DNA of 64,000 nucleotides from Heptranchias perlo (taxonomy: Eukaryota), in contig NC_090340.1 in NCBI RefSeq assembly GCF_035084215.1, positions 14,570,001 through 14,634,000 of the forward strand, read 5' to 3'. Positions 8,662 to 44,577 of the stretch are shown here, piece by piece. A program made the position numbers and the translations under genes. The number at the start of each line of letters is the position of its first letter. Positions within the stretch are counted from its first letter, which is position 1. The notes below the pieces were generated by a model. That model was not told the DNA's origin, made no database searches, and worked only from the letters and a program-made list of their open reading frames with translations.

Positions 8662-9770
8662 TTTTTTTATTTGTTCATGGGATGTGGGCGTCGCTGGCGA
8701 GGCCGGCACTTATTGCACATCCCTAATTACCCTTGAGAAGGTGGTGGTGAGCCGCCTTCTTGAACCGCTGTAGTCCGTGTGGTGAAGGTTCTCCCAAAAT
8801 GCTGTTTGGAAGGGAGTTACAGGATTTTGACCCAGCAACGATGAAGGAACGGCGAGAAATCTCCAAGTCGGGATGGTGTGTGACTTGGAGGGGAACGTGC
8901 AGGTGGTGTTGTTCCCATGTGCCTGCTGCTCTTGTCCTTCTAGGTAGTAGAGGTCGCGGGTTTAGGAGGTGCTGTCGAAGAAGCCTTGGCGAGTTGTTGC
9001 AGTGCATCCTGTGGATGGTACACACTGCAGCCACTGTGCGCCGGTGGTGAAGGGAGTGAATGTTTAGGGTGGTGAATGGGGTGCCAATCAAGCGGGCTGC
9101 TTTGTCCTGGATGGTGTCGAGCTTCTTGAGTGTTGTTGGAGCTGCCCTCATCCAGGCAATTGGAGAGTATTCCATCACACTCCTGACTTGTACCTTGCAG
9201 ATGGTAGAAAGGCTTTGGGGAGTCAGGAGGTGAGTCACTCGCCGCAGAATACCCAGCCTCTGACCTGCTCTTGTGGCCATAGTATTTACATGGCTGGTCC
9301 AGTTAAGTTTCTGGTCAATGGTGACCCCCAGGATGTTGATGGTGGGGGATTTGACAATGGTAATGCCGTTGAATGTCAAGGGGCGGTGGTTCGACTCTCT
9401 CTTGTTGGAGATGGTCATTGCCTGGCACACGTCTGGCGCGAATGTTACTTGCCATTTATCAGCCCAAGCCTGGATGTTGTCCAGGTCTTGCTGCATGCGA
9501 GCACCTACTGCTTCATTATCTGAGGGGTTGCAAATGGAACTGAACACTGTGCAAACATCAGCAGACATTCCTATTTCTGACCTTATGATGGAGGGAAGGT
9601 CATTGATGAAGCAGCCGAAGATGGTTGGGCCCAGGACACTGCCCTGAGGAACTCCTGCAGCAATGTCCTGGGGCTGATATGATTGGCTTCCAACAACCTC
9701 CACCATCTTCCTTTGTGCTAGGTATGACTCCAGCCACTGGAGAGTTTTCCCCCGATTCCCATTGACTTCA
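8662..9770 (-). mobile_element. LINE, same family as the element at 26205-29478, 5'-truncated
   Basis: 327-aa ORF (GVPQGSVLGPTIF..FINDL, WADKWQVTF) nearly identical to 28432-29415; A-rich tail reads as T-run at ~8662. Confidence 0.9.
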
Positions 9771-10289: not shown

Positions 10290-13200
10290 TACGCACTTGC
10301 TTCTGTGTACGTGGCTTCTGTTACCCCTTTTAGGATTTTCGCCTGTAGCTCGGAATACTCCGTACTTCTTTCGTTTTTTTTTAGATATCCCCGTTTTCTT
10401 GGAGCAAGTCAATTCTAGAGTCGCCTACGTCGACTTGTCACGGGCTGTTTTTCATCGTGAAGTCACGATTTGGATTGTTAATTGGTTGTTTTACCAGTTT
10501 GTGAATTGCTGGTCAAAGCAGTTATCAGCCTGAGATTAAATACACGGTCAAAGTCAGCACAAGACGAAGTACTCCTCCATCGCATAAATCTGGATGCTCC
10601 ACACGAGTACCCTATTCCTCTCTGAGTGTTTCTCAGTCCTACCTGACCGTACGATGTCCTCTCCTTTTCACATTTACGTCCTGGAGTTTTCTTGTTGCTG
10701 CTTCTCGGTTCTACATAACGTGCGCGTTCCTCTCCTCTTCACGTTTAGGTTGGAGCTTGATTTAGTCTGATCAAATTTAATTCTCACCGCTGCTCCCCGC
10801 ATGGGCTGCAAAGAAAGCATTTTGTTCTGTGGTTATTTTACTGTGCCAGTTTACATACGCCTGGCCAAACATTGATCACCATGACCGGGGCTACAAATAA
10901 AGTGCAGAAACCATAGTGGATACATTTAAATAGGTGAGAAAATGAAGACCGATCACTAGTGCGGTCACTGCAACTGATATTTCAACCTGTCAATATTCAC
11001 ACCACAATACACTGTTACAAACGAGTTGAAATGAGCGACAACATCAGAACATGTCTGTGTAAGGTTATACTCCACACACACGATTTGACGAATCATTAAA
11101 TAGTTTTATCTGGTTACATATTTAACAAACCTAACTTTAATTATGTACTTTTTAACCATCAACAGAAGCAATGTTCCGTTTGCTAAATATTTTTCCTAAT
11201 TTTTTTTATTCGTTCATGGGTTGTGGGTGTCGCTGGCAAGGCCAGCATTTATTGCCCATCCCTATTTGCTCTTGAGAAGGTGGTGGTGAGCCGCCTTCTT
11301 GAACTGCTTCAGTCCGTGCAGTGAAGGTTCTCCCGCAGTGCTGTTAAGAAGGGAGTTCCAGGATTTTGACCCAGTGAGGATGAAGGAATGGTGGTATATT
11401 TCCAAGTCGGGATGGTGTGTGTCTAGCGTGAATGTTACTTGCTACTTACCAGCCCAAGACTGGATGTTGTCCAGGTCTTGCTGCATGCAGGCACGGACTG
11501 CTTCATTATCTGAGGGGTTGCGAATGGAACTGAACACTGTGCAATCATCAGCGAACATCCCCATTTCTGACCTTATGATGGAGGGAAGGTCATTGATGAA
11601 GCAGCTGAAGATGGTTGGGCCTAGGACACTGCCCCGAGGAACTCCTGCAGCAATGTCCTGGGGCTGAGATAATTGGCCTCCAACAACCACTACCATCTTC
11701 CTTTGTGCTAGGTATGACTCCAGCCACTGGAGAGTTTCCCCCCTGATTCCCATTGACTTCAATTTTACAAGGGCTCCTTGGTGCCACACTCGGTCAAATG
11801 CTGCCTTGATGTCAAGGGCTGTCACTCTCACCTTACCTCTGGAATTCAGCTCTTTTGTCCATGTTTGGTCCAAGGCTGTAATGAGATCTTGAGCCGAGTG
11901 GTCCTGGCGGAACCCAAACTGAGCATCGGTGAGCAGGTTATTGGTGAGTAAGTGCCGCTTGATAGCACTGTCAACGACACCTTCCATCACTTTGTTGATG
12001 ATTGAGAGCAAACTGAAGCGGCGGTAATTGGCCGGATTGGATTTGTCCTGCTTTTTGTGGACAGGACATACCTGGGCAATTTTCCACATTGTCGGGTAGA
12101 TGCCAGTGTTGTAGCTGTACTGGAACAGCTTGGCCTGGAGCACAAGTCTGCAGCACTACAGCCGGGATGTTGTCGAGGCCCTTAGCCTTTGCTGTATCCA
12201 GTGCAATCTGCCGTTTCTTGATATCACGTGGAGTGAATCGAATTGGCTGAAGACTGGCTTCTGTGATGGTGGGGATATCGGGAGGAGGCCGAGATGGATC
12301 ATCCACTTGGCACTTCTGGCTGAAGAGGTTGCAAACGCTTCAGCCATGTCTTTTGCACTCACGTGCTGGACTCTGCCATCATTGAGGATGGGGATGTTTA
12401 CAGAGCCTCCTCCTCCCGTTAGCTGTTTAATTGTCCACCACCATTCACGACTGAATGTGGCAGGACTGCAGAGCTTTGATCTGATCCGTTGGTTGTGTAA
12501 TCGCTTAGCTCTGTCCATAGCATGTTGCTTCCGCTGTTTAGCATGCATGTAGTCCTGAGTTGGAGCTTCACCAGGTTGGCACCTCAGTTTTAGGTACGCC
12601 TGGTGCTGTTCCTGGCATGCTCTTCTACACTCCTCATTGAACCAGGGTTGATCCCATGGCTTGTTGACAATTACGATTTGAATCACTCTAGAGGGACAAA
12701 TGCTTTTGTGAGTAAGAGTTGAAGTGTTCTGACATGTTTGTGATAAAATCCCTTCATTTTATAATCTTTTTTCACATTTGAACCTTCTGCCTGGATGAAT
12801 TATATAAGCGTGTCAGTTACCTACCGGTCCCATTAGACTTGCCCGGGAATCAATGGAATTTAATTGAGCAAGTAATTGGAATATTTACTCAATATCCATG
12901 TTCGTGATTTCAAATACATTTTTCTTGTCAGTGGAAAGCCTTGCATCATTCTCAATATCACATTTATCCGACAGCGTTTGTAATCCCGGCCCGTGTAACG
13001 ATCTGCAATCATGAGCAGCCACTCCGGGCTTCACTCATACTAGTTACAGCTCGCAATGGACTGATATTAAAAGTGACGACGTACGAAGGCAGATTTCACA
13101 TATCAACTACTCTAAAATGAATATTTCTGCTCTCACTACCGAGATATTCCGACCCATTTATAATATGATTCTGTGAGGATCGCTACACTTCAAAATGTCT

Positions 13201-14321: not shown

Positions 14322-14987
14322 ATGTTGACGAGTTTTGTATTTCTCCTGAAGATCATTTACACAGGTACCTACAATTCTATAACCCAGCTGCCTCGATAAA
14401 AAACATGTGAAATGGTTTCCGCTGAATCACCATGAAATTCAAATCTCTCCCAATTTTGCTGATTTCTTTGTTTCATCCTCACGACGTATCTAATAAAATT
14501 AACCAAACTTTGAATCTATTGCCTCACAGCCGCTTCTAATATTTCGATCAGTCACTTAACTTATTGGACATGCAATTAGATTCAGAGGGACACACATCAC
14601 CTTCTACTGGATATTCCACTGAACACAAATTCAGTGAAATTTAGATAATCTTCGCGATTCTTCTTCACCTCTTTCATTTGTAGGTAGAAGTGTGTTCCAA
14701 AGTGTTCGGTTTCACGTCCAATACAATTAACCACGTATATTTTCTAACATCTGCGGCGCATACTTCGATCAGAGTGGCTCAAATTCCCGAACATGTGATT
14801 GCATTAAGAGGGACAGACATCGTGTCCTACTGTGTAATCTCCCTCTCTCAGGACAACTCTTGAATAGACGTGTGTTGGTGGAAACAGGTTGTGAATGGAC
14901 CTGCAAAGTGGAACGGATAACAGAAAATCATTTGGTATGAAAATGAAAGAAGGCGGTTTCTTTCAGTTGCTGAACGCGACTTTAAGA
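14322..14987 (+). pseudogene. IgSF receptor copy A: leader exon plus truncated V exon
   Basis: Leader 14322-14364 (MLTSFVFLLKIIYT, acag|gtacc as in copy B). V exon from 14751 has acceptor AG>AT, TGA at 14861-14863, a WWKQ motif and a frameshift, and is cut at ~14987 by a CR1 insertion. Confidence 0.85.
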
Positions 14988-17742: not shown

Positions 17743-18119
17743 CTTTTTCTCACCAACGTTTTTCAGAAAACATTGCCGGTTATTATCCAAAAGCTAATGA
17801 TGAACGATCTATGATGGACCCCACTTTGTATTCATTTAGCATTTGGTCACGTTAAAGGAATGGGCAAAGGATGACCAGTGTACACATCAACGTCTTGCGA
17901 AATTCATCCCGAGAAGATCGCACTCGCACCTCCATTCCGGCATTTTAACTCATCAGGAAACAACACTGACTGCACGAGTTAGTAAATTCTGCACTTGGAA
18001 AGCAAATATTTTCCCTTACTCTTTGCTGTACGTGACACATGTGATTTAACAGTCGAATATGTGCAGAAATTAGCATATCGTACTGAACAAACGAAGCATC
18101 TGTTCTAAAGCCGCAGTTA

Positions 18120-18230
18120 CAGGATGTCAAACGACATTGCGACGCATCTCAAGAAAAACAACCGCAAACTATTGTTAACAGTGGCAAACTCGTAATTAGT
18201 GCAGTGCGTCAGCTTAATCTGTTGCTCAGA
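18120..18230 (+). promoter_or_regulatory. Putative proximal promoter/5'UTR block shared by copies A, B and D
   Basis: acgacattgcgacgcat and tggcaaactcgtaattagtgcagt recur at similar distance from the ATG in copy D (~40425-40500) and copy A (~14220-14290). Function is inferred only. Confidence 0.35.
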
Positions 18231-18285
18231 ATGTCGGCGAGTATGGTGTTTCTGTGCTTGACGCTCCGGGGGATTATTTACACAG
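18231..18285 (+). CDS. Copy B exon 1, leader (MSASMVFLCLTLRGIIYT)
   Basis: ATG, hydrophobic stretch and phase-1 donor acag|gtacc; homologous exons in copies A and D. Confidence 0.75.
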
Positions 18286-21200
18286 GTACCTCTTTATTCA
18301 CAGTCCCCACAAGAATAGCTAATTTAATTAATAAAATGATTCTGAAGCAGTTTCTACTTAATTGCAATTAAGATAATTCCTCTATCTAGATTCATGTTTT
18401 CTCTCTTCCATCTCCATGTCGTATCTAATACAATTAACCTATACTGAACTATATTTTCTGACAGCTGCGGACCACAGTTCGTTCAGAGTGACTCAAGCGC
18501 CCGAACAGGCGACTGTATCCAGAGGGGGAAACGTCACCTTCCACTGCATATTCCCAATCTCTCAAACCCATTCCTGGGTAAGAGTATATTGGTGGAAACA
18601 GGGTGAGAATAAATACCTGCCAAGAAGCGGCGATAAGAGAAAACGATTTGGTCTGGAAGGTAAAGCGAGCGGTTTCTTTCAGTTACTGAACGCGAATTTC
18701 CAAGACTCTGGAGTCTATCACTGCGCAGTGATCCGAGAGGGAACAGTTGGAGGAAATGGAACCGCATCTCATCTAATTGTGCATGGTAAGTGTGAAACAC
18801 CACAGAGCGGGACTGTCGTAAACATATCAAACATAACAAACGGGAGTGTTTTGTGATTGTTTTATTGTACAATTTTTGACAGCATAAATATTTTTATGAA
18901 CACATTTCGCGAGAAAGTTAAGCTGTATGTTCGTGCTCTCTGTATAGAACTGCCAATTAGAGAGTAAAATGTGACCCTCCACACGCAGGGTACTGCAACA
19001 TGTATTAATATTAAGGAATTGGACTGTAACTCCAAATAAATTTATACACCAGATAACTGATAGCGGAAGTTCGGATAATTTCCAAGCTGAGTGATAATTG
19101 TTTATATTAATGCGCTTTCCCCACCATATACACCGGTCTTAGCCAATTTTAGATGCTCTGTCTGCCCCCACCGCTGTCTTGGGGTTTAACATTCATGAAA
19201 TTAATTCTCACACGATGATTGACTAGTTAGCGTCACAGATTTGAAAGCCAGCGTCCAACTAACTGTTGATTAACGGATTCACTCAACAAACTGGAGCTCG
19301 GAATTCACAACGTTATCACCTCACTAACCCCCAATAAATACAATAATACGCAGGAACTGTGTTGCTGAAACCTCCTGAAGTTCAACCGAATATAGTTTCT
19401 TTCACCAATCGTTATGCTTCGGCTGTGGGATCAGTCCGATACCTTCTAATGCCCTCGTTTTATCATCGGCAATGTGTAGATTACTCGATTACTCGTCACT
19501 TTCTAACTGAGCAAAAAAAAATGGAGGACTGGGCGCGCCAACTTTCCCCCAGGGCTTATTTCTTTAATTCTTTGGACTATGAAACGTGACATTGATTAGC
19601 GATTGTTGCGACGTGTCTGCCGTTTAACTCAAAGTTTTGGACTCGATGGTGCATGTAAAATTGAATATATGCTGGTGACGATAAATGATATGGTTGAGGT
19701 GTGTGTTGACGATCTGCCTAACATTGACAGGACAGGAGGGTGTGCTTTAGAATGTTGCTGTTAGAACAAAATGGACCAAAGGTGCCCAGTAACTCGATTT
19801 TGATCATTGTCTGTTCCGCAGCTCCCCCAACTCCACTGAAGATTGTCTCCAGGACAGCTGAGGGGAATTCATCTGCGTCTCTGACTCTTGTGTGTGAAAC
19901 GGCTGAGTTTTTTCCGGAGAATTTCACCCTCGCTTGGTATAAAAACGGCGTTGTAATTGCAACAGGAATAAATACCATTAAACGGCAGAACACTGAGGGG
20001 CTGTATGAAGTTTCCAGCTCTTTGGAAGAGACGCAGCCTGTCCCGAGCGACGCCAATTATACCTGTTTGGTATCTCACGTCTCGCTCAACATTCCAGCTG
20101 TTGCCACCTATAGTGTTACGAAATCTAACCAAGGTACGAGGCCAACAGTCCGAAAAGGATAGTTAAAATCGCAAACAGATATATCGTAGAATTTGTACAT
20201 ATTGATAATCATGAAGATAGTTCACGGGAAACTCATGGGGAATATCAACGAAAACATAAACATCTTCTTTTAATGTATAATATAATTGAACCCGATGTGT
20301 TGTAAAATGGGGTTATATCGTCCGGTACACAAATATTCTCAGTCAAACCTTGTTTGCTTTCAACTTCCTCTATTTGAGGTATAACAAATATAAACAGGAG
20401 TTTATCTTTTGTATCCCATTATATTTCTCTCCTGCTCATTATTAATACTTATCCGGGTTTTTTCTATATTAAACTGGTTTTATTCTGCCGGCTTTCCCTG
20501 CATCAGGACAATTACCAAGAGCTTCATTGGACGTGTTTGCTCTTTGGCTTCTTCCAATGCAGTTCTCAATCCTGAAATCCCCCTCCTCCTTCCGGCTGTG
20601 TCTTGTGCAGAGTTCTGAACTTAAACCGCTGTCCAACTTCTGCCCCACATCTCTCCATGCCACAGCGGGTTCAATTGGGACCTGTCTCATAAATCTCATG
20701 TAAACTGTACCCGCAAATTGGTTACAGTGCATCCGGTTCACTATATCATTTTATTAACAAATCTTAGCTTTGCCAGACAATAATTAATAAACCGCCGCCC
20801 GTTGATCTCCTTTATATTCAATGACATTTTTACTTCAATAAACACAGTGCGGATAATTGAATGAGGATTATTAACCAATTGCTGCAATCCAGAATTTTGT
20901 TCGGGCAGCGAGTAAACCCGTGTGAACAAATTCACCCCGATTTCGTCAAACTATATGTTAATAAATAAGAATGGTCAAGGACATAAACAAGTCATTCGGT
21001 CCAGGGAAATTTATCCCCCTAATTGTCCTAAAACATTGTTTTGAGATCCCTAAACAGTAGTCACCTTCGCAGATTATTCCAGAACATCTCATCCATTCGA
21101 TGAAGAAGTTACTTCAAATATATATAAAAAATGAACGTTTTTTTATTTACACTTCCTTATTGTCATTCTATACAGCGGAATTACTGAAAGCATCAATAGT

Positions 21201-22870
21201 TTAACCAATTAACTATCTTGCGGCCTCTTTTTATCAAACGCCCACCATAACTTAATATTCCTATTAATCTTGCAGCTACTGTCATTGATGTGTCCTTTTA
21301 CTTCTGGGCTCTTGGGTGTGCGATGGGTGGATTGGCGTTTCTAGTGCTGTTGATCGTCATTGGGAAGCGGTGCCGTCTGCAGAATAAAGAAGGTAAGATC
21401 TACTGTAAAAGCTTGATTTTAGCCCGAGACCTCAGGGTGACACAGAGGAAGCAGAACTCGATTATAACTTAAAGTTGAAAGGAATGTTACCTGTTTTCAG
21501 GGAGCGCAGATTGTTCCAACTACACATTACAACGCAGAAATCTCTACAGAATTGTATTAAAATTTGCGATAATTATCTGGATGTTTGCAACAGAAATTGA
21601 CAATTTACAGCAAGTGATAAATGAACTGTGCCCTGGCACACAGTCACTTTCCAACCCATTACTCTGTGGTTGCGTAATGAGTTTGAGTGAAACCGTGTGA
21701 GGCCCCGGCCCGGGAATGGTTGTGCACCGTTGTTAATCGCTACAGGGGCTGGGATTCAAACATTGTCAGCACAAACTGAAATTGAAAATTATGTTCGCTT
21801 TCTACCGAATCTAGAAATTTCTTTGAAATCACTGAATGGAAACTGAGTAAATGTGTCAATCTTTCAATATCATTAAATTTCATTCGTTTCCAGGTAAACA
21901 GGGGCGTGTAATGGGACCGACCCGCCATGAAGAGCTGGTACGTTCATTCATTCATCCTCTGCAGAGAGTTCAAATGTGAAGAAAGGTTGCTATAATGGAG
22001 AGATGTTATCACAATCATGTCAGTACGTTAGGTGGCGGACAAGAAAACTGCCAGTTTCGTTTAAAATGTACCGATGTAATAACAGTTTATAGATTAATCC
22101 ATTCCTTTAATTTGAAAAAATACTTTATGTTCTAAAACTGCCGTTCATTTAAACATTTCTGGAACATAGTATTGTAGAGTGAATATTAACAGGTTTAAAT
22201 ATTAGTTATAGTGACCACAGAACTCATTGGTCTCAATATTCGTATTTATGCCAATATATTAATTATGCTTTGTACACTTGATCTCTAGCCCAGGTCATTC
22301 TGTTCAATGTTTGGTCAGCAGTACGTAAAGTGGTGAAGGCAATGAACTAGCCACGTAATCAATCATTTGCTTTGTTGCCCATGCAGGGAACGGAGGCTGA
22401 GATCGTGCATTATGCTGCATTAGATTTGAGCAAAGCCAGGAAAACTCCAAGACTTAAAGGTGAAGAGGAGAGAACCGTGTACGCTCAGGTAGGGCTGAGT
22501 AACAGATCAGAGAAACATAGATCATGAGTGTAACACCAACATTCATGCGATAGTGGAATATTTCGGGTTGTGCTGACTTTGATCGTGTGATGTATCTAAA
22601 ACTATTTGTGTATTATTCTGACGACTGCTTTGAGCAGCAGTCCACAAAACTTGCAAAACGACCAATCAACAATATTTCCAAACATTGGCTTTACAGAACA
22701 AACAAGGGGCAGCCCGTGACAAGCTGACATACGCAACGCTAGCATTGACTGGCTCAGTGAAAAGGGCGCAATGCAAAAATAACGAAAGAAGCACCGACTA
22801 TGCCGAGCTACAAACGCAAAACCAAAGAAGAGTAACAGAGGCTGTTTACTCCGAAGCAAGAATCAAATAG
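18231..22870 (+). CDS. Intact IgSF inhibitory receptor, leader-V-C1-TM-ITIM tail (SIRP-alpha-like / VJ-C1 type), 374 aa, 7 exons (copy B)
   Basis: Exons 18231-18285, 18465-18785, 19822-20133, 21276-21392, 21894-21937, 22387-22488 and 22697-22870. All introns are GT-AG, phases 1,1,1,1,0,0, total 1125 nt with no internal stop. Confidence 0.88.
18465..18785 (+). CDS. Copy B exon 2, Ig V-set domain
   Basis: VTQ.P...G.NVTFHC, VYWWKQ, L.N..FQDSGVYHCAV, GNGT..L.V; 321 nt, phase 1-1. Confidence 0.93.
19822..20133 (+). CDS. Copy B exon 3, Ig C1-set domain
   Basis: LTLVCETAEFFP, WYKNG, GLYEVSSSL, YTCLVSHVSL; 312 nt, phase 1-1. Confidence 0.93.
21276..21392 (+). CDS. Copy B exon 4, transmembrane
   Basis: FYFWALGCAMGGLAFLVLLIVIG followed by KRCR; no charged residue in the TM; tgcag| acceptor and |gtaag donor. 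Confidence 0.88.
21894..21937 (+). CDS. Copy B exon 5, 44-nt cytoplasmic linker
   Basis: tttccag|...ctg|gtacgt; converts phase 1 to phase 0 as required; homologue at 44018-44059. Confidence 0.7.
22387..22488 (+). CDS. Copy B exon 6, ITIM (VHYAAL) plus TVYAQ
   Basis: atgcag|gga...cag|gtaggg, 102 nt, phase 0-0. Confidence 0.82.
22697..22870 (+). CDS. Copy B exon 7, ITIM (LTYATL), TDYAEL, AVYSEA, stop
   Basis: ttacag|aac; open to TAG at 22868-22870. Confidence 0.85.
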   Translation, partial: NKQGAARDKLTYATLALTGSVKRAQCKNNERSTDYAELQTQNQRRVTEAVYSEARIK

Positions 22871-23201
22871 CGATAGAATTTTAGATGTGGAATTCATTTT
22901 TTGGTGTCCACTTATAGCATTCCGCTGCTGTATTAACTAAATGCCTGTGTGTATCGTGTGATAGCATACCTCTGAGAGGTAATGCATTCCAGTGTAATAT
23001 TAGAGAATGCAGCCTCTAGTCTTTACTTACTGTTCAACTGTTTCCTGAATTTTCATTTAGTTGATTTCAAGAAAAATATGACTTTCCTGACATACTTGCA
23101 TGTTAAATCTGTATTATCTAACGGAAGACAAATCTCTACACTTTCAATTAGCTAATACGCCAATAATCTTGGTGAACCTAATTATCATCATACATAAATT
23201 C

Positions 23202-23207
23202 AATAAA
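23202..23207 (+). terminator. Candidate polyadenylation signal of copy B
   Basis: AATAAA ~330 nt after the stop; similar context (ttcaataaaaataga) downstream of copy D near 46590. Confidence 0.5.
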
Positions 23208-23442
23208 ATAGATTATTTACGAACTCTTACAAATCAACGATTCGTGCTCCTTTTTTGGAAGAAAAACTGCAAAACCTGAGAGTTGATTTATGTGTAACGT
23301 TACTGCGTTCTGACTTCCTGTCCTGGTGACGCTCCTGATATGGAACGCAGGAAGTTCCAGTCTATGGACTCCTCCATAAATCTACTGAATTTAGCTTCCA
23401 GTTGTTTTATGTCCTGCAAACATCTGTTTACCCATGTGACCA

Positions 23443-26042: not shown

Positions 26043-29000
26043 GGAACATAGGAAGTATGCTATTTAGCCCGGTGAGCCTCGTCCACCATTCAATGAGATC
26101 GTGGTTGATCTGTGACCGAACTCCATACATCCGCCTGAGCCCCCAATATCTTTAATACCTTCGGTTAACAAAAATCTATCAATCTCAGATTTAAAATTAA
26201 CAATAGGGTACGGTAGCATAGTGGTTATGTTACTGGGCTAGTAATCCAAAGGCCTGGACTAAAATCCAGAGATATGAGTTCAAATCCCGCCACGGCAGCT
26301 GGCGAGTTTAAATTCAATTAATTAAATAAAATCTGGAATTAAAATACTAGTATCAGTAATGATGGCCATGAAACTACTGGATTGTCGTAAAAACCCATCT
26401 GGTTCACTAATGTCCTTTAGAAAAGGAAACCTCCCGCTCTTACCCGGTCTGGCCCATATGTGACTCCAGACCCACAGCAATGTGGTTGATTCTTAATTGC
26501 CCTCTGAAATGGCCGAGCAAGCCACTCAGTTGCAAAATCTCACTACGAAAAGTCATAATAAGAATAAAACCGGACGGACCACCAGGCACCGGACACGACA
26601 ACGGCAAAACACCAAGCCCAGTCGACCCTGCAAGGTCCTCCTTACTAACATCTGGGGACTTGTGCCAAAATTGGGAGAACTGTCCCACAGACTAGTCAAG
26701 CAACAGCCTAACATAGCTATACTTCAGAATCATATCTTTCAGCCAACGTCCCAGACTCTTCCATCACCATCCCTGAGTATGTCCTGTCCCACCGGCAGGA
26801 CAGACACACCAGAGGTGGCGGTACAGTGATATACAGGCAGGAGGGAGTGGCCCTGGGAGTCCTCAACATTGACTCTGGACCCCATGAAATCTCATGGCAT
26901 CAGGTCAAACATGGGCAAGGAAACCTCCTGCTGATTACCACCTACCGTCCTCCCTTCAGCTGATGAATTCAGTCCTCCTCCATGTTGAGCACCACTTGGA
27001 GGAAGCACTGAGGGTAGCAAGGGCACAGAATGTACTCTGAGTGGGGGACTTCAATGTCTATCACCAAGAGTGGCTCAGTAGCACCACTACTGACCGAGCT
27101 GGCCAAGTCCTGAAGGACATAGCTGCCAGACTGGGCCTGCGGCAGGTGGGGAGGGAAAAACTTACTTGACCTCGTCCTCACCAATCTACCTGTCGCAAAG
27201 GCATCTGTCCATGACAGTATTGGTAGGATTGACCACCGCACAGTCCTCGTGGAGATGAAGTCCCGTCTTTGTACTGAGGACACCATCCAACGTGTTGTGT
27301 GGCACTACCACCGTGCCAAATGGGATAGATTCAGAACAGATCTAGCAGCTCAAAACTGGGCATCCATGAGGCGCTGTGGGCCATCAGCAGCAGCAGAATT
27401 GTATTCCAGCACAATCTGTAACCTCATGGCCCGGCATATTCCTCACTACCATTACCAACAAGCCAGGGGATCAACCATGGTTCAATAAGGAGTGCAGAAG
27501 AGCATGCCAGGAGCAGCACCAGGCGTACCTAAAAATGAGGTGCCAACCTAGTGAAGCTACAGCTCAGGACTACATGCATGCTAAACAGTGGAAGCAACAT
27601 GCTATAGACAGAGCGAAGCGATTCCACAACCAACGGATCAGATCAAAGCTCTGCAGTCCTGCCACCTCCAGTCGTGAATGGTGGTGGACAATGAAACAAC
27701 TAACGGGAGGAGGAGGCTCTGCAAACATCCCCATTCTCAATGATGGCGGAGTGCAAAAGACAAGGCTGAAGCGTTTGAAACCATCTTCAGCCAGAAGTGC
27801 CGAGTGGATGATCCATCTCAGCCTCCTCCTGATATCCCCACCATCACGGAAGCCAGTCTTCGGCCAATTCGATTCACTCCACGTGATATCAAGAAACGGC
27901 TGAGTGCACTGGATACAGCAAAGGCTATGGGCCCCGACAACATCCCAGCTTGTAGTGCTGAAGACTTGTGCTCCAGAACTAGCTGCGCCTCTAGCCAAGC
28001 TGTTCCAGTACAGCTACAACACTGGCATCTACCCGACAATGTGGAAAATTGCCCAGGTATGTCCTGTCCACAAAAAGCAGGACAAATCCAATCCGGCCAA
28101 TTACCGCCCCATCAGTCTACTCTCAATCATCAGCAAAGTGATGGAAGGTGTCGTCGACAGTGCTATCAAGCGGCACTTACTCACCAATAACCTGCTCACC
28201 GATGCTCAGTTTGGGTTCCGCCAGGACCACTCAGCTCCAGACCTCATTCCAGCCTTGGTCCAAACATGGACAAAAGAGCTGAATTCCAGAGGTGAGGTGA
28301 GAGTGACTGCCCTTGACATCAAGGCAGCATTTGACCGAGTGTGGCACCAAGGAGCCCTCGTAAAATTGAAGTCAATGGGAATCAGGGGGAAAACTCTCCA
28401 GTGGCTGGAGTCATAACGACCACAAAGGAAGATGGTAGTGGTTGTTGGAGGCCAATCATCTCAGCCCCAGGACATTGCTGCACGAGTTCCTCAGGGCAGT
28501 GTCCTAGGCCCAACCATCTTCAGCTGCTTCATCAATGACCTTCCCTCCATCATAAGGTCAGAAATGGGGATGTTCACTGATGATTGCACAGTGTTCAGTT
28601 CCATTCGCAACCCCTCAAATAATGAAGCAGTCCGAGCCCGCATGCAGCAAGACCTGGACAACATCCAGGCTTGGGCTGATAAGTGGCAAGTAACATTCGT
28701 GCCAGATAAGTGCCAGGCAATGACCATCTCCAACAAGAGAGAGTCTAACCACCTCCCCTTGACATTCAACGGCATTACCATCGCCCAATCCCCCACCATC
28801 AACATCCTGGGGTTCACCATTGACCAGAAACTTAACTGGACCAGCCATATAAATACTGTGGCTACGAGAGCAGGTCAGAGGCTGGGTATTCTGCGGCGAG
28901 TGACTCACCTCCTGACTTCCCAAAGCCTTTCCACCATCTACAAGGCACAAGTCAGGAATGTGATGGAATACTCTCCACTTGCATGGATGAGTGCAGCTCC

Positions 29001-29612
29001 AACAACACTCAAGAAGCTCGACACCATCCAAGATAAAGCAGCCCGCTTGATTAGCACCCCATCCACCACCCTAAACATTCACTCCCTTCACCACCGGCAC
29101 ACAGTGGCTGCACTGTGCACCATCCACAGGATGCACTGCAGCAACTCGCCAAGCTTTCTTCGACAGCACCTCCCAAACCTGCGACCTCTACCACCTAGAA
29201 GGACAAGAGCAGCAGGCGCATGGGAACAACACCACCTGCACGTTCCCCTCCAAGTCACACACCATCCCCACTTGGAAATATATCGCCGTTCCTTCATTGC
29301 CGCTGGGTCAAAACCCTGGAACTCCCTTCCTAACAGAACTGTGGGAGAACCGTCACCACTCGGACTGCAGCGGTTCAAGAAGGCGGCTCACCACCACCTT
29401 CTCGAGGGCAATTAGGGATGTGCAATAAATGCCGGCTTGCCAGTGACGCCCACATCCCGTGAACGAATAAAAAAAAAATTGAACGAGCATCAACTGCCAT
29501 TTGCAGAAGAGCGTTCCAAACTTCTACCATCCTTCATGTGTAGAAGCATTTACTGACTTCACCCCTGCAAGTCCTGGCTCTAATTTTTAGTCTACGCCCC
29601 CTGGTCCAAGTG
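26043..29612 (-). mobile_element. CR1 3'-tail fragment split by the 26205-29478 insertion
   Basis: 26043-26204 (...gatttaaaattaacaat) continues at ~29477 (aattgaacgagcatcaactg...) as one CR1 tail. Confidence 0.7.
26205..29478 (+). mobile_element. Apparently full-length ~3.3-kb single-ORF LINE (APE endonuclease + RT, CR1/L2 group) with tRNA-like 5' head
   Basis: A-box-like gtagcatagtgg and B-box-like gagttcaaatcc at 26213-26290. APE motifs (VLLTNIWGL, GDFNV, LDLVLTN, DH) from ~26630, then RT (LDIKAAFDRVWH, VPQGSVLGP, FTDD). A-tail at the 3' end; a few frameshifts and stops. Confidence 0.9.
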
Positions 29613-32828: not shown

Positions 32829-33138
32829 CTGCCCCAACTCCGCTGAAGATTCTCTCCAGGACACCCGACAGCAATTGATCTGTATCTCTGACTTGTGTGT
32901 GAAAGGGCTGAGATTCATCCGAGAAATTCCACCCTCCCTTGGAATTAAAATGGCATCGTAACTGCGATAGGAATACAAAACATTCAATGGCAGATCACTG
33001 AGTGGCTGTATGACGTTTCCGGCTCTTTGGAACAAACGCAGCCTGTGCCGAGCGGCGCCAGTTATACCTGTTTGATATCTCATATGTCGCTCGAGACTCC
33101 ACCTGTGGTCACCAACACGGTTACTAATTCTAACAAAG
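32829..33138 (+). pseudogene. IgSF receptor copy C: decayed C1 exon
   Basis: ttccgcag|ctgccccaactccgctgaag matches copies B and D; TGA at 32876-32878, frameshifts, YTCLISHMSL retained, aaag|gtac donor. Flanking intron homology spans 32335-35490. No leader, V, TM or tail exons found. Confidence 0.88.
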
Positions 33139-33221
33139 GTACAAGGCCAACAGTCCAAGGAGAGCCAGCTACTGTTAAATTCTTAAAGAGATATTTCATA
33201 AAGTTCGCTCATATTAATAAT

Positions 33222-34774
33222 AAGACCATAAGACCATAAGAGATAGGAGCAGGAGTAGGCCATTCGGCCCCTCGAGCCTGCTCCGCCATTTAATGAGATC
33301 ATGGCTGATCTGATTTTTACCTCAACTCCACTTTCCCGCCTTTTCCCCATATCATTTGACTCCCTTGTTGATCAAAAATTTGTCGAACTCAGCCTTGAAT
33401 GCATTCAATGACTCAGCCTCCACAGCTTTTTGGTGTAAAGAATTTCAAAGATTCACGACCCTCTGGGAGAAGAAATTCCTCCTCATTTCCATCTTAAACG
33501 GGCGACCCCTTATTCTGAGACTATGTCCCCTAGTTTTAGATTCCCCATGAGGAGCAACATTCTCTCAGCATCTACCCTATCGAGTCCCCTCAGAATCTTG
33601 TATGTTTCAACAAGATCTCCTCTCATTCTTCTAAACTCCAATGAGTATCGACCCAACCTGTTCAATCTTTCCTCATAAGACAACTCTTCCATACCCTGAA
33701 TTAACCGAGTGAACCTTCTCTGAACTGCCTTCAATGCAAGTATGTCCTTCCTTAAATAAGGGCACCAGAACTGTATGCAGTACTTCAGGTATGGTCTCAC
33801 CAGCACCCTGTACATTTGTAGCATGATTTCCCTGCTTTTATACTCCATCCCCCGAGAAATAAAGGCCTTCCGGATTACCTGCTGCACCTGTATGTTGACT
33901 TTTTGTGTTTCATGTACGAGGACAGCCAGATCCCTCTGTACCACAGCATTTTGTAGTATTTCTCCATTCAAATAATATTTTGCTTTTTTATTTTTCCTCC
34001 CAAAGTGGATGACTTCATATTTTCCCACATTATATTCCATCTGCCAAATGTTTGCCCATTCGCTTAACCTGTCAATATCCTTTTGCAGACACTTTGTGTC
34101 CTCATCGCAACTTGCTTTTCCACCTATCTTTGTATCATCCGCAAATTTGGCCACAAGACACTCTGTTCCTTCATCCAAGCCATTGATATATATTGTAAAT
34201 AGTTGAGGCCCCAGCACTGATCCCCGCGGCACCCCATTAGTTACAGATTGCCATTTTAAAAATGACCCTTTTATCCGGACTCTTTGTTTTCTGTTCGTTA
34301 GCCAATCCTCTATCCATGCCAGTATATTACCCCAACACCATGAGCTCTTATCTTGTGCACTAATCTTTTATGTGGCACCTTATCGAATGCCTTTAGGAAA
34401 TCCAAATATACTACATCCATTGGTTCCCCATTATCCACCATGCCCGTTCCTTCCTCAAAGCACATGATTTCCCCTTCATAAAACCATGTTGACTCTCCTT
34501 GATTGTATTATGAGTCTCCAAATATCCTGCTACTACTTCCTTAATAATGGATTCTAGCATTTTCCCAATGACAGATGTTAGGCTAACTGGTCTATAGTTA
34601 CCTGCTTTCTGTCTCAGAATCTAGTGAAGTCTGGAAGATTACAACCAATACACCCACTCTCTCTGTGGCCACTTTCTTTAAGACCCTCGGAAGCAAGCCA
34701 TTAGATCCAGGGGTCTTGTCAGCCTTTAGACCCATTAGTTTACCTCGTACTTTTTCTCTAGTGATAGTGATAGT
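33222..34774 (-). mobile_element. CR1-clade LINE inserted in copy C intron 3
   Basis: (taagacca)n tail; 240-aa RT ORF; host sequence catattaataat|catgaag is split with a possible ataat duplication. Confidence 0.9.
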
Positions 34775-40310: not shown

Positions 40311-40781
40311 CGCAAAGTGATCGTGACACGGGCGACTGCACTGGTTGCTTAGGAACAAAACGGTCAGCAAATCTCACTTCACCAACGAAACCGATCTTCC
40401 GAACCTGCAGATACAGGGTGTAGAACGTCATTGTGACGCATTTCAGCTTAAATATTCAGCAGACCCTTCTTCTAATGGCAAACTCATGATCAGTGCAGTC
40501 TGTGATCAGAGTAATCTTTTACTCGTAATGTTGTCGAGTGTAATACTTCTGTTCCTGCACCTGTCTCTCGGGGAATTATTTACACAGGTATCTTTTATTC
40601 TCTATCCCAGCTGTCTCAGTAAAAAATGCACCTGAAGGTGTTACCACTTAAACTGAATGACATTTAGTTCGTCTGTCTATATTCTTCTTTCTCTAATTTA
40701 TTTCCATGTACAAATATTTTCTAAAGTGCCTGGTTCCACATAGCATATAAGTAACCAGATCTTTAATATATTTTCTAACAG

Positions 40782-41084
40782 CTGCCGCGCGTATTTCTCA
40801 ACCCCCCGAACAAGTGATTGCATTAAGGGGGGCAGATATCACCTTCTACTGTGTAATCCCGCTCTCTCAGGACAACTCAGAAGTGCATTGGTGGAAACAC
40901 GGCGAGAAAGAATATTTGCAAACAACGGCCGATAACAGAAAGCGATTTGGTGTCAAAAATAAAGAAGCCAGTTTCTTTGAGCTGCGGAACGTGACTTTCC
41001 AGGACTCTGGAATCTATCAATGCACAGTGATCCGTCAGGGAAGAGTTCGTGGAAATGGAACGGGCTCAAATCTAATTGTGTGCG
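40782..41084 (+). CDS. Copy D V-set exon (intact)
   Basis: ISQPP...GADITFYC, VHWWKH, FQDSGIYQCTV, GNGTGSNLIV; 303 nt, AG/GT intact. Confidence 0.85.
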
Positions 41085-41460
41085 GTAAGTGACTGGGGTG
41101 AGTGGGAACTTCCAAATGTATCAAATGTAACAGTATAAAACATTTATATTAATACATTTACAGTCAAACTCAATGTCACTCCGATTTCTCTGTACATAGC
41201 TGTTAATTACACCGCACAATATGGCGCTTCATTTGCTGAGTTGTGTGAAATTCCATCAATATTAACCAGAGTAAGTAACATGTTACTGGATTCATCTCAA
41301 CATGTAGTTTCTACATCAGACTTCTGATGAGGGAAGGTGCGGAACAAATTCCAAACATATTGATGACTGATTCATATTAATGCGTCTCCCCCGTCATATA
41401 CAGGGGTTTAACCCTATTTTAGAAGCTTTATTTGTCCCTGTCGCTGTCAGTGGGGTTTAA

Positions 41461-41506
41461 CGGTCACTCCTGAAATTAATGCTCACATTAATTTCAGGAG
41501 TGACCG
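41461..41506. repeat. Perfect 21-bp inverted repeat with 4-nt loop
   Basis: cggtcactcctgaaattaatg-ctca-cattaatttcaggagtgaccg. Confidence 0.95.
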
Positions 41507-44500
41507 AATGGCGGTTCGAATGGCGGATTTCAGATAAGCTACAATTAACTGTTAATCATTGGATTTACTCAACACATAGAACCATGAACCAGAACTTTGC
41601 CGCCGCTTTCCCCTGCAATAAACGAATCATTCCCCAGAAATTGTGTTGCTGAAGCCTTCTGAGGTTGAGCGGAAAGTAATTTCCCTGAGCCGATCCCATG
41701 CTCCTGCTGTGTGGGCTTCCCGATATCCACTAGGGCCCTCCTTTCATTATCAGTAATACACAGATTACTCGTTTCTCTCTTGGGGAGACAGACAGACAGA
41801 GCTAGAGATCCTAACAGAGAAGGACAGAGGATGCCATTCTTCTCCCACATCTTCTGTTTCAGATCTCCCCAGAAACCTGATTTTCCCCATTTTCTGTCCG
41901 CAGCTGCCCCAACTCCACTGAAGATTGTCTCCAGGACACCCGAGAGCAAATCACCGACTTCTCTGACTCTTGTGTGTGAAACGGCTGAGTTTTACCCGGA
42001 GGATTTCACCCTCACTTGGTATAAAAATGGCGTCAAAACCACAACTGGGATAAATATCACGAAACGCAGAACACTGAGGGTCTGTATGAAGTTTCCAGCA
42101 CTTTGGAAGTGACTCAGCCGAAGCGGAATGGGTCTGTTTACACCTGTTTGGTAACTCATGTCACCCTCCAGGAACCCGCCATTGTAACCTACAATGTCAG
42201 CAATTCCAACCCAGGTAAGGGGTCGAAGAAGTGAGGTCAGCTATTGTTAAATACTGAACGGATATTTCATAGGGTTTGTTCATATTAATAATCATGAAGA
42301 TGATTCACGGATAATTCACGGAAAACTCATGGGAAATTTCTACAAAGCATAAAATGCATATTTTAATGTAAAACATCATTGACAACGGGTAGTAAAAGCT
42401 GAAGTTATATCATTCGCCACACATAGGTATTCAGTCAAACCTCAATAGCCTTCAAATTTCTGTATTTGATGTAAAGCAAATATAAGCAGAGGTTGATTTT
42501 TGTTATCTGATTATATTTCATATTCTGCTTATTATTTATCACATTTTATTTATTTTTGTTTCCATGTTAAAATGGTTTTATTCGTTACTATTATCTAGCT
42601 TTCCTGCAACAGGAAGATTACCAGGAGCTACATTCAAGTTGTCGGCTCTCGGGTTTCGCCGAATGCAATTTGCGATCCTGACCCCCCTTTTCGGCGACTC
42701 CCAGTGAAGAGTTCTGAAATTAATTCTCTGACTAACTTGTACCCCTCACCCCTCCATGGCACAACGGATTGGAGTGGACCGGTCTCATAAATTGCATTGA
42801 AACGGTGCTCACAACCTGGCTGCAGTTCTGCCGGTTACACCGTTTTATTAAAAGCTATTTGCCTGGTCAGGCGACAGTGAATAAACCATCGCGCGTTGAT
42901 CTCCTATTTTGCGATATTCTTACCTCAATAAATACAGTGCAGTGTAGATGTGTGAATTGGGCGTTTTAACCGATTTCTGCAATTCGGCATTTTGTGCGGG
43001 CAACGGTGAAATGATTGTCACCGAATTGCCTGCGATTTGATCAGACAATAAATAAAGAACATGAGAAAAGTCAAGGGTAAGAACAAACCATTCGGTCCAG
43101 GGAAACATCCCTCTCGTATTCTACCTCTTCTAAAACAGTGTTTCAAAAGTCATAAATTCAGTACCCCTCCTCGAAGATAATTCCAGAAATGTCTCATCCA
43201 TTTCAGACATTTGAGAAATTCCTTCCAACATTATATCCAAAAAAGTAACATTTTTAATTTAGACTTCCTTATTGCCGTTCTATGCAGTTACTGAAAGCAT
43301 CATTACTTTAACCAATACGCTCTCTTCTGGCACCTTTTTAGGAAACACCCGCCATAACGTACAACTCAATATATATGCTCCTATTGTTCTTACAGATCCT
43401 GTCGGTATGTCTCTTTACTACTCGGGTTTTAGATATGCCATGGGCGGTGCGGCGTTTCTAGTGCTCCTGGTCATCACCGGGACGCACTGCCAATTGCAGG
43501 TTAATGAAGGTAAGATCTATCGTAAGCGTTCGATTTGCATACAAAACTTCAGGGAGCGGTGGGGAGAGGTAGTGTGAGACTCCGAATAACACAAAGAAGG
43601 CAGTGTTATCTGATTTCAGGGAGCGTCCATTGTTCCAACAGTAACAGATTCTGCACTTTATCCTCACAGAATCAGATTAAAAATGGATCCGATTACCTGT
43701 ATATTTGCAACAACAATTTCCACTTTGCAGTGTGATAAACGAACTGTACCCTGACACATAATCACTTTCCAAACTAGTGGGTTGTGGGTCCCCAACTAGT
43801 TTGAATGAAGCGGTGTGAGGCTCCGGCCGATAATGGCCATAGGTCATTGCTGATCTCTACCGGGACTCCGATTCATTAACTATCGGTACAATCTGAAATT
43901 GAAAATCATGTTCCGCTTCATACTGGCTCTGGAAAGGTCTTTGAAATCACTTTGAAATCTTGGAAACTCAGTAAATATTTCAATCGTTCCTTATAATGAC
44001 ATTTCATTAATTCACAGGGAAAAAAGGCAAAGACTGGACCGAACGGTCGTGAAAGGCCGGTACGTTCATCCATTCATCACAGCAAAGTGTTCAAATATGC
44101 AGAAAGATTGATATCATGGAGATATTTTTATCATAATCATGTCAGAACAGTTTGCCTATTTCCTAAAAGTATTTGTTTTGTTCCGCTTAATAGGTCATTC
44201 AAATCGTGTTCAGAAAAATATTTGACGCTGGCGGGGAAAGATTTCACCCCCGAGGGCGAAATTGGTTTTCGGAAAAGAAAGGCGAGTGCAGTGTACAACG
44301 GGCGGCCGCTTCCCTATCGCCCGTTTCGCGCTACCGCCGAAGGCCAATTTCACCCAGTCTCCGGTGTGTTGCTATTTTAAATTATTAATTAGTAGAAAAT
44401 AAAACTGTCAGTTTCGTTGAAAATGTATCTAAGTAATTACTGTTTATAGAGTCAATATTATTTATAATTGGGGAAATTCTTAATATTGTGGAACAACCGC

Positions 44501-44577
44501 TCATTTAATCATTTATGTGGTGTATAATGAACATTGACGGGTTTACATAATAAGTTATAGCGAGCACAGTACTCAGC

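What the first reader, a model, noticed from the sequence alone, without database searches (positions are those of the whole stretch)
18231..22870. Intact non-rearranging V(J)-C1 receptor with an antigen-receptor-like ectodomain and a SIRP-alpha-like inhibitory tail
Seen: a complete 7-exon, 374-aa gene. Its single V exon already contains the J-like G strand (YHCAV...GGNGTASHLIV), followed by one true C1-set domain, an uncharged TM and five cytoplasmic tyrosines. Established: C1-set domains are largely restricted to Ig, TCR, MHC, beta2m, tapasin, SIRP and a few B7-related proteins, and V+C1 is the layout of a TCR or Ig light chain. Inference: this is a germline-encoded inhibitory receptor family in a cartilaginous fish, relevant both to SIRP/NK-receptor origins and to models of the pre-RAG antigen receptor. 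I cannot tell from the sequence whether the family is already named.
Basis: partly seen in the sequence, partly recalled or inferred. Interest (0 to 1): 0.8.

Follow-up and report, generated by a model that had tools for sequence, protein, structure and literature searches.

The report
Shark SIRP-like V-C1 inhibitory receptor gene
This is a real, intact and transcribed sevengill-shark gene for a non-rearranging cell-surface immune receptor (one antibody-like V domain, one C1 domain, inhibitory tyrosine tail); it belongs to a large shark, ray and chimaera family that databases predict only under inconsistent automatic names.

Summary
Seven GT-AG exons (18231-22870, +) encode 374 aa: leader, germline-joined V(J) domain, one true C1-set domain, uncharged TM, and a tail with five tyrosines.

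All six introns are spliced out in public RNA-derived contigs. Exon by exon, the model equals a RefSeq protein of Heptranchias perlo, automatically named "tapasin-related protein-like". So the gene is already predicted, but misnamed.

It belongs to a large multigene family found in sharks, rays and the elephant shark. Automatic names vary: SIRP-alpha-like, SIRP-beta-like, tapasin-related, CD276, MHC II beta-like, Ig lambda-like. Members have either long ITIM tails or short tails with an arginine in the TM, which is the paired-receptor pattern. The gene has species-specific paralogues and no 1:1 orthologue.

Among non-rearranging receptors with solved structures, SIRP-alpha is the closest by sequence profile. 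The gene fails SIRP membership because it has one C1 domain, not two. It is not NKp30, tapasin or UrIg. A relationship to PRARP could not be tested.

The inhibitory function (SHP-1/2 recruitment) is inferred from motifs only. I found no paper on the family. The scan had already noted this family in other windows of this genome. Verdict: new member of a known kind, moderate interest.

The parts
18231..18285 (+). Exon 1: start codon and signal peptide (MSASMVFLCLTLRGIIYT, phase-1 donor)
   Evidence: Translation. The joint 18285|18465 is seen in a contig with no mismatches (X2 record 7). Equals residues 1-18 of P0163.
18465..18785 (+). Exon 2: V-set domain with germline-joined J-like G strand (…YHCAVIREGTVGGNGTASHLIVH)
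   Evidence: Pfam V-set E 1.5e-10. AF2 model pLDDT 91.8. Family J motif N-G-T-G-S/T-x-L-x-V aligns with SIRP-alpha SGAGTELSV and lambda FGTGTKVTV. No RSS.
19822..20133 (+). Exon 3: single C1-set domain (…LVCETAEFFPENFTLAWYKNG…YTCLVSHVSL…)
   Evidence: Pfam C1-set E 9.2e-12. Best PDB hits are UrIg2 and Ig constant domains, with SIRP-alpha and SIRP-gamma lower in the list. All three Hatherley C1 criteria are met. Joints 18785|19822 and 20133|21276 are in RNA contigs.
21276..21392 (+). Exon 4: stalk, uncharged transmembrane helix (about 21296-21364, FYFWALGCAMGGLAFLVLLIVIG) and stop-transfer KRCR
   Evidence: Translation. TM helix predicted in the paralogue model. The TM Cys is conserved in 30 of 48 family members.
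21894..21937 (+). Exon 5: short cytoplasmic linker (KQGRVMGPTRHEEL)
   Evidence: Translation. Joints 21392|21894 and 21937|22387 are in RNA contigs.
22387..22488 (+). Exon 6: first tyrosine pair. ITIM VHYAAL (22405-22422, Y292) and TVYAQ(N) (22474-22488, Y315)
   Evidence: Translation. Motif scan. The contig over this exon has no mismatches (X1 record 6).
22697..22870 (+). Exon 7: second tyrosine pair. ITIM LTYATL (22724-22741, Y329) and ITSM-like TDYAEL (22793-22810, Y352); then AVYSEA (Y368) and stop TAG
   Evidence: Translation. Joint 22488|22697 is in RNA contigs. Weak similarity to exon 6 suggests an exon duplication.
23202..23207 (+). Candidate polyadenylation signal AATAAA, about 330 nt after the stop
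   Evidence: Pattern search only. No read coverage here, so this is inferred.

Best explanation
The locus is a functional, transcribed gene of Heptranchias perlo. It encodes a type I membrane receptor of a cartilaginous-fish-wide multigene family of non-rearranging VJ-C1 receptors.

Shown here: an intact seven-exon reading frame, correct splicing in RNA, a V-set domain with a germline-joined J-like G strand, one bona fide C1-set domain, an uncharged TM, and a 115-residue tail. Also shown: relatives in sharks, rays and a chimaera that carry either such tails or short tails with a TM arginine.

Inferred mechanism:
- The membrane-distal V domain binds an unknown ligand.
- The two tyrosine pairs, VHYAAL/TVYAQN and LTYATL/TDYAEL, are each spaced 23 residues apart. 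They are phosphorylated by Src-family kinases and dock the tandem SH2 domains of SHP-1/SHP-2.
- This damps ITAM signalling, including signalling from the Arg-TM relatives, which would pair with an ITAM adaptor.

In other words it would work like SIRP-alpha within a SIRP-alpha/beta-type paired-receptor system, but with a light-chain-like V-C1 ectodomain.
For: - Gene structure and size.
- Domains: plus the C1 criteria from PMC2785349.
- Splicing: all six junctions are in exon-only contigs of public runs. Some contigs are identical to the window and others match the paralogue P0164.
- Independent prediction: the model equals RefSeq protein P0163 of H. perlo exon by exon.
- Family: 88 proteins at E<=1e-10 in an exhaustive HMMER search with the V exon. 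Sampled members come from Scyliorhinus, Mustelus, Heterodontus, Heptranchias, Stegostoma, Hemiscyllium/Chiloscyllium, Pristis, Hypanus, Hemitrygon, Mobula and Callorhinchus.
- Long ITIM tails versus short tails with a TM Arg occur within one subfamily. Examples: P0003, P0162 and P0168 against P0002, P0166 and P0006. Arg is present in 9 of 48 aligned members.
- The family profile aligns collinearly with V plus C1 of SIRP-alpha (71.2 bits, i-E 7e-19). This is on a par with a lambda light chain (69.8 bits) and above UrIg2 V-C1 (60.8 bits).
- No RSS in the gene.
Against: - No experiment shows phosphorylation, phosphatase binding, a ligand or the expressing cell type. The tissue of the RNA runs is not on record.
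- Only two tyrosines fit the strict ITIM consensus. TDYAEL is ITSM-like (L instead of V/I at +3). TVYAQN and AVYSEA are non-canonical.
- This gene has Ala at the second Gly of the J-like bulge.
- Differences from the closest expressed paralogue are mostly non-synonymous: 14:1 in V and 25:4 overall. That fits diversifying selection but equally fits relaxed constraint. The excess is statistically weak (binomial about 0.08 for V).
- No activating partner with a near-identical ectodomain lies in this window. The Arg-TM copy at 40.5-46.4 kb shares only 53% of its V and is frameshifted.
Confidence: 0.75

Rival explanations
1. It is a cartilaginous-fish member or orthologue of the PRARP family. [quoted passage not shown] 2019, J Immunol). 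From my memory of the abstract, these are non-rearranging VJ(-C1) membrane proteins with an ITIM in bony fish, amphibians, reptiles and birds. This reading concerns family assignment and is compatible with the inhibitory mechanism above.
For: The architecture is the same as I recall it: VJ, C1, TM, ITIM. PRARP is listed with SIRP, NKp30, CD79, CD8 and NITR among joined-VJ genes (PMC11599192) and as an MHC-associated VJ gene (PMC10751288). The best single-V hit outside cartilaginous fish was a kiwi V-plus-ITIM protein with no C1 (P0149, E 4.9e-5).
Against: The exhaustive V search found no bony-vertebrate V-C1 protein closer than generic V-set hits. The kiwi protein's only relatives found were Pogona V-V-TM proteins without C1.
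Confidence: 0.2
2. It is a true SIRP-alpha orthologue, i.e. the shark CD47 receptor, as many RefSeq names in the family imply.
For: RefSeq names many relatives 'tyrosine-protein phosphatase non-receptor type substrate 1-like'. SIRP-alpha and SIRP-gamma are the best non-rearranging receptor hits of the family profile in the PDB. The tail has two tyrosine pairs.
Against: There is one C1 domain, not two, and the spliced RNA shows no further Ig exon. The family is large, has lineage-specific duplications and gives no 1:1 orthologue in the tree. Automatic names are inconsistent across close relatives. V identity to solved SIRPs is too low to appear among the top V hits.
Confidence: 0.08
3. It is an NKp30 (NCR3) homologue, whose ligands would be B7-H6-like molecules.
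For: It has a joined VJ-type V with a GNGT-containing G strand. The predicted two-domain ectodomain of the paralogue best matches B7-H6 among non-redundant structures (Z 16.6). B7-H6 is the ligand, not the receptor.
Against: NKp30 has a single V and, from memory, a TM arginine. This gene has V-C1, an uncharged TM and ITIMs. NKp30 (6yjp_A) ranks only 34th for the V model, at Z 12.5 within a tied field. An unchecked scan note places an NKp30-like gene in an MHC class III block on another piece of this genome.
Confidence: 0.03
4. It is a decaying or functionally neutral copy in a birth-and-death cluster: transcribed, but no longer a working receptor.
For: The cluster is littered with broken relatives and LINE insertions. 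The second J-motif glycine is replaced. Non-synonymous differences from the paralogue are in excess.
Against: The 374-codon frame is intact, all splice sites are canonical, all structural hallmarks (both disulfide pairs, Trp, C1 motifs) are kept, and the RNA is spliced.
Confidence: 0.07

Closest known systems
SIRP family (SIRP-alpha, -beta, -gamma)
   Same: Non-rearranging V domain with a J-like G strand, followed directly by C1-set. Collinear profile alignment over V plus C1. Inhibitory members with two tyrosine pairs in the tail, plus relatives with a short tail and a basic TM residue, i.e. paired receptors. SIRP was proposed as a link to antigen-receptor evolution (PMC2785349).
   Different: One C1 domain instead of two. 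A much larger family with lineage-specific expansions, seen only in cartilaginous fishes in the searches made. No evidence of CD47 binding. Synteny not examined.
PRARP (Fu et al. 2019), as recalled from the abstract
   Same: VJ, C1, TM and ITIM architecture; non-rearranging.
   Different: No detectable close sequence relative in bony vertebrates in the searches made. The relationship is untested because no reference sequences were available.
UrIg / UrIg2 (Flajnik et al. 2023; 2025, PMC12227049)
   Same: Elasmobranch, non-rearranging VJ followed by C1. UrIg2 is the best PDB hit of the C1 exon and of the family profile.
   Different: UrIg2 has ten Ig domains, forms disulfide-linked homodimers and has Fc-like units. 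It has no single-C1 ectodomain and no ITIM tail.
Ig light chains / TCR chains
   Same: V-C1 layout. Foldseek's best matches for the paralogue ectodomain are kappa light chains over both domains. Lambda aligns at 69.8 bits.
   Different: V and J are joined in the germline and there is no RSS. The gene has a TM and a signalling tail of its own. A conserved N-glycan sequon sits at the position of the J-motif Phe (35 of 48 members), and there is no stalk cysteine.
B7 / butyrophilin family
   Same: The predicted rigid-body V-C arrangement is most like B7-H6, PD-L2, B7-H3 and BTN (Z 15-16.6). One relative is auto-named CD276 homolog.
   Different: The C domain scores as C1-set. It falls well below threshold for the CD80-like and BTN3-like C models. 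The tail is ITIM-bearing, and there is no B30.2 domain.

Membership tests
C1-set Ig domain (criteria of Hatherley et al. 2009, PMC2785349) | (F/Y)(F/Y/H)P at the start of the BC loop | tested here: met
   FFP in …VCETAEFFPENF… (criteria)
C1-set Ig domain (criteria of Hatherley et al. 2009, PMC2785349) | Exactly 13 residues between the B-strand Cys and the C-strand Trp | tested here: met
   C-ETAEFFPENFTLA-W has 13 residues between C and W
C1-set Ig domain (criteria of Hatherley et al. 2009, PMC2785349) | xVxH after the F-strand Cys; Pfam C1-set above the gathering score | tested here: met
   YTC-LVSH; PF07654 at 45.6 bits against a cut-off of 21
SIRP family | N-terminal V-set domain with a J-like G strand | tested here: met
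SIRP family | Two membrane-proximal C1-set domains (V-C1-C1) | tested here: not met
   Only one C1 exon. RNA joins 20133 directly to 21276. No other Ig exon lies within the gene.
SIRP family | Cytoplasmic tyrosine motifs in two pairs that recruit SHP-1/SHP-2 | tested here: inconclusive
   Motifs are present, with pairs Y292/Y315 and Y329/Y352. Only two are canonical ITIMs. Binding is not testable here.
SIRP family | Binds CD47; orthologous locus (synteny) | not testable with these tools
The window itself holds only family copies and LINEs.
Rearranging antigen receptor chain (IgL/TCR) | V and J separated in the germline and flanked by RSS | tested here: not met
   One uninterrupted V-J exon. 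No RSS-like heptamer-spacer-nonamer in 18000-23000.
NKp30 (NCR3) | Single V ectodomain, no C domain, charged TM residue (from memory) | tested here: not met
   C1 exon present and TM uncharged. NKp30 structure is not a distinguished match.
Tapasin-related protein (the RefSeq name of this gene) | Large N-terminal tapasin domain preceding the Ig domains | tested here: not met
   The mature protein starts directly with the V domain. Only V-set and C1-set are found.
UrIg / UrIg2 | VJ domain followed by an array of several C domains, Ig-like dimer (PMC12227049) | tested here: not met
   Single C1, then the TM
PRARP | Non-rearranging VJ (plus C1 outside birds), TM, ITIM (recalled from the abstract) | tested here: met
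   Met at the level of architecture only
PRARP | Sequence relationship or orthology to chicken, frog or fish PRARP | not testable with these tools
   The paper and sequences are not held. The kiwi and Pogona lead was uninformative.
Paired activating/inhibitory receptor family (general kind) | Related ectodomains with either ITIM tails or short tails plus a basic TM residue | tested here: met
   Met at the family level. Copy D in this window has the Arg-TM type.

The most novel reading that the evidence does not exclude
The family is the surviving cartilaginous-fish lineage of the ancestral single-V, single-C1 non-rearranging receptor. [quoted passage not shown] Its light-chain-like V-C1 layout would then be primitive rather than a secondary loss of a C domain.
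Probability: 0.1. Interest if true: 0.8.

Novelty: new member of a known kind. Interest (0 to 1): 0.5.

Why it matters
C1-set domains are confined to antigen receptors, MHC and a few associated molecules. Non-rearranging VJ-C1 genes are the material from which models of the pre-RAG antigen receptor are built (SIRP: PMC2785349; UrIg/UrIg2: PMC12227049; proto-MHC/AgR: PMC10751288).

A large, expressed family of VJ-C1 receptors in the oldest living jawed vertebrates would add a well-populated data point to that debate. This family is spread across cartilaginous fishes, has both inhibitory and activating-type members, and is known only through inconsistent automatic names. It would also give shark immunology a candidate NK- or myeloid-type paired-receptor system.

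This particular gene is useful as an intact, RNA-supported inhibitory member with a clean exon map. It also shows that the RefSeq name "tapasin-related protein-like" is wrong.

Tried and rejected
- PDB sequence searches with the V exon alone and with a V-only family profile gave only generic hits: I-set arrays, scFv, PD-L1, TCR, VNAR. They did not discriminate.
- Structure searches with the V model gave a flat field from Z 14.0 to 12.2. VNAR and NCAM were on top and NKp30 ranked 34th, so these also do not discriminate.
- The PRARP lead led nowhere. The kiwi hit P0149 has only Pogona V-V relatives. The Fu 2019, Flajnik 2012, Ohta 2015/2019 and Flajnik 2023 papers are not held.
- A C1-region search with an orthologue found only cartilaginous-fish proteins. 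No named bony-vertebrate references were obtained, so reference phylogenies could not be built.
- The excess of non-synonymous differences from the paralogue is too weak, and not focused on CDR-like loops, so I do not claim positive selection.
- Six literature searches found no description of the family.
- The spliced model was searched exon by exon, and the joined step was left out. I neither typed the joined model nor sent it to database searches or folding. Full-length database searches and the fold used other public proteins (P0003, P0149, paralogue P0164). The identical public protein P0163 appeared only as a search hit, as a row in the local tree and motif scan, and as one query of a local tblastn against the window.


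Full report
**Observation**

- The exons are 18231-18285, 18465-18785, 19822-20133, 21276-21392, 21894-21937, 22387-22488 and 22697-22870.
- Every intron is GT..AG. The exons sum to 1125 nt, i.e. 374 codons plus TAG.
- Pfam assigns the second exon to V-set (E 1.5e-10) and the third to C1-set (E 9.2e-12). Both are above the curated cut-offs.
- The C1 exon meets the three sequence criteria that Hatherley et al. use to separate C1-set from other Ig domains (PMC2785349). These are FFP at the BC loop, 13 residues between Cys(B) and Trp(C), and LVSH after Cys(F).
- The V exon has the F-strand motif DSGVYHC. It continues without a break into a G strand, NGTASHLIV.
- In a profile alignment this G strand sits in register with SIRP-alpha SGAGTELSV and with the lambda J segment FGTGTKVTV.
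- A loose scan for heptamer-12/23-nonamer signals found none in 18000-23000. The gene is germline-joined and non-rearranging.
- The TM segment (FYFWALGCAMGGLAFLVLLIVIG) has no charged residue.
- The tail has five tyrosines: Y292 VHYAAL and Y329 LTYATL (canonical ITIMs), Y352 TDYAEL (ITSM-like), and Y315 TVYAQN and Y368 AVYSEA (non-canonical).
- The tyrosines form two pairs, each spaced 23 residues apart and each on its own exon. The two exons are weakly similar to each other.

**Is it expressed?**

- Three public runs from one sample hold only exon-sized parts of the stretch.
- Their contigs, laid on 17900-23400, show all six introns removed exactly at the predicted borders. Depth falls on the exons and essentially none on the introns. 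This marks the runs as RNA.
- Some contigs match the window without any difference. Examples are the leader-V junction (X2 record 7) and the TM and exon 6 parts of X1 record 6.
- Others differ at 1-6% of positions. The V-exon differences translate precisely into the sequence of a second H. perlo protein, P0164. So at least two paralogues are transcribed.
- Contigs cannot give transcript ends or expression levels, and the tissue is not on record.

**Identity**

- Searching with an orthologue returned P0163, a 374-aa RefSeq protein of Heptranchias perlo named "tapasin-related protein-like".
- Each of the seven exon translations is found in P0163 at consecutive positions. The four split codons give the intervening residues.
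- The window is therefore sharpnose sevengill shark. The gene is already predicted by the public annotation pipeline.
- The name is wrong. The mature protein begins with the V domain and has no room for a tapasin N-terminal domain.
- Full-length searches and the fold used other public proteins (P0003, P0149, P0164).

**The family**

- An exhaustive HMMER search of 1.84 billion representatives with the V exon gave 203 hits at E<=1e-3 and 88 at E<=1e-10.
- The single-domain hits share hallmarks: VYWWKxGE…, QDSGVYxC…GNGTGSxLxV, VPPTPLKI…, LVCxTAxFYPE…LTWYKNG…, and GLYEVSS…VYTCxVSHxSL.
- Named members come from catsharks, houndshark, horn shark, sevengill, zebra and bamboo sharks, sawfish, stingrays, devil rays and the elephant shark.
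- Their automatic names are inconsistent: SIRP-alpha-like, SIRP-beta-1-like, tapasin-related, CD276 homolog, MHC class II beta-like, Ig lambda-like, or uncharacterized.
- Outside cartilaginous fishes the search found only generic V/I-set proteins. These were mollusc hemicentins, turtle multi-V proteins, one kiwi V-plus-ITIM protein at E 4.9e-5, and similar.
- In a 63-row tree the window gene groups with two H. perlo paralogues (support 97-98). This group lies inside a 13-row subfamily that also contains horn shark, houndshark, catshark and zebra shark genes, with a batoid sister pair. The picture is lineage-specific duplication with no 1:1 orthologue.
- Within that subfamily, long ITIM tails (P0003, P0162, P0168, this gene) coexist with short tails (P0002, P0166, P0006).
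- In 9 of 48 aligned members an arginine sits near the outer end of the TM. A TM cysteine is present in 30 of 48. This is the pattern of paired inhibitory/activating receptors.
- The window itself holds a second copy at about 40.5-46.4 kb with the Arg-type TM. That copy has frame breaks and a LINE insertion.
- The window also holds an orphan C1 exon, a broken V, and a tail-exon relic on the minus strand.

**Closest known relatives**

- The C1 exon's best PDB hit is shark UrIg2, then Ig constant domains, with SIRP-alpha and SIRP-gamma lower.
- A 48-member family profile ranks UrIg2 (6.6e-39), an Ig entry, then SIRP-alpha (4.1e-33) and SIRP-gamma (7.5e-29).
- At the level of single envelopes, the collinear V plus C1 alignment to SIRP-alpha scores 71.2 bits. 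This equals a lambda chain (69.8) and exceeds UrIg2 V-C1 (60.8).
- An AlphaFold model of the window's V exon (pLDDT 91.8) is a short V domain. Its best matches are VNAR, NCAM domain 1, PD-1, CD79b and TCR/Ig V, within a flat field. NKp30 is 34th.
- A model of paralogue P0164 (pLDDT 82) matches kappa light chains over both domains in Foldseek.
- In a non-redundant search the same model matches B7-H6, PD-L2, B7-H3 and butyrophilins (Z 15-16.6), with UrIg2 at Z 13.8.
- Structure thus confirms a V-C1 ectodomain but does not pick a family.
- The gene fails SIRP membership on domain number. It fails NKp30, tapasin and UrIg membership on architecture. It fails antigen-receptor-chain membership for lack of RSS.
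- It matches PRARP in architecture as I recall that paper. No PRARP sequence or text was available to test this.

**Mechanism**

- Shown: the domains, the topology, the motifs, the transcription and the family pattern.
- Inferred from established knowledge of ITIM receptors: ligand binding by the V domain, tyrosine phosphorylation, and docking of the tandem SH2 domains of SHP-1/SHP-2 on the two 23-residue-spaced pairs. The result would be inhibition of ITAM signalling, including signalling by Arg-TM relatives.
- The family conserves an N-G-T sequon at the position of the J-motif Phe (35 of 48 members). No stalk cysteine is present. I take this as a hint against an Ig-like V-V dimer, but that is speculation.
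- Differences from the expressed paralogue are 14 non-synonymous to 1 synonymous in V, and 25:4 overall. This is compatible with diversifying selection. However, it is statistically weak and not concentrated in CDR-like loops.

**Literature and earlier notes**

- Six full-text searches found no description of this family.
- The concept it belongs to is well established. Joined-VJ genes (CD79, NITR, SIRP, CD8, NKp30, PRARP) are listed in PMC11599192. [quoted passage not shown] SIRP as "a link to antigen receptor evolution" is in PMC2785349.
- The scan's own notes show that the same family was already met in several other windows of this chromosome and followed up with similar conclusions. I used those notes as leads only.
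- Unchecked notes place the MHC genes, and an NKp30-like gene in a class III block, on other pieces of the genome.

**Verdict**

- The gene is real, intact and expressed. It is best described as an inhibitory-type member of a cartilaginous-fish VJ-C1 paired-receptor family that works like SIRP-alpha without being a SIRP.
- It is already predicted in RefSeq under a misleading name. As far as I could search, it is undescribed in papers.
- I rate it a new member of a known kind, with moderate interest.
- Its evolutionary weight depends on reference phylogenies and synteny that could not be run here.

Noticed in passing
window 40528-46373 (+): A second family copy ('copy D'). It has a leader (60 nt against 55, so out of phase), a V exon 40783-41085 (53% identical to this gene's V), and a C1 exon about 41903-42216 with a frame break near 42067. 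Its TM exon (about 43401-43508) is of the Arg type (…YYSGFRYAMGGAAFLVLL…), like catshark P0002. A LINE RT is inserted at about 44560-45800, and the tail exons are degenerate. It is either a pseudogene or an activating-type gene with assembly errors.
   Followed up: partly
window 32886-33143 (+), 14747-14987 (+), 10298-10396 (-): Orphan relics of the same family. They are a C1 exon (about 60% identical), a frame-broken V exon, and on the opposite strand a tail exon resembling exon 7 (58% over 33 aa). These are signs of birth-and-death turnover in the cluster.
   Followed up: partly
window 8723-9706 (-), 27376-29415 (+), 44629-45657 (+), 11442-12143 (-), 33510-34232 (-): Several copies of non-LTR retrotransposon ORFs with reverse-transcriptase domains (Pfam RVT_1, E down to 2e-16). 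Three of them are near-identical 327-342-aa C-terminal RT segments, which suggests a recently active LINE family that is breaking up the receptor cluster.
   Followed up: partly
runs X1/X3 laid on window 18461-18784 and 19821-20133: The more abundant spliced contigs over V and C1 belong to the paralogue P0164, not to the window gene. Their V differences are 14 non-synonymous to 1 synonymous.
   Followed up: partly
family alignment A2 (columns of the J-like motif and TM): Two family-wide features of unknown meaning. One is an N-G-T glycosylation sequon at the position of the J-motif Phe (35 of 48 members). The other is a cysteine inside the outer half of the TM helix (30 of 48). In Arg-type members the arginine sits one residue before the cysteine's column.
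   Followed up: no
one search hits P0001, P0005, P0010, P0020: The highest total scores for the shark V exon came from mollusc 'hemicentin-1-like' giants with 9-25 matching Ig repeats (23-28% identity). This is a summed-domain effect, not a relationship.
   Followed up: yes
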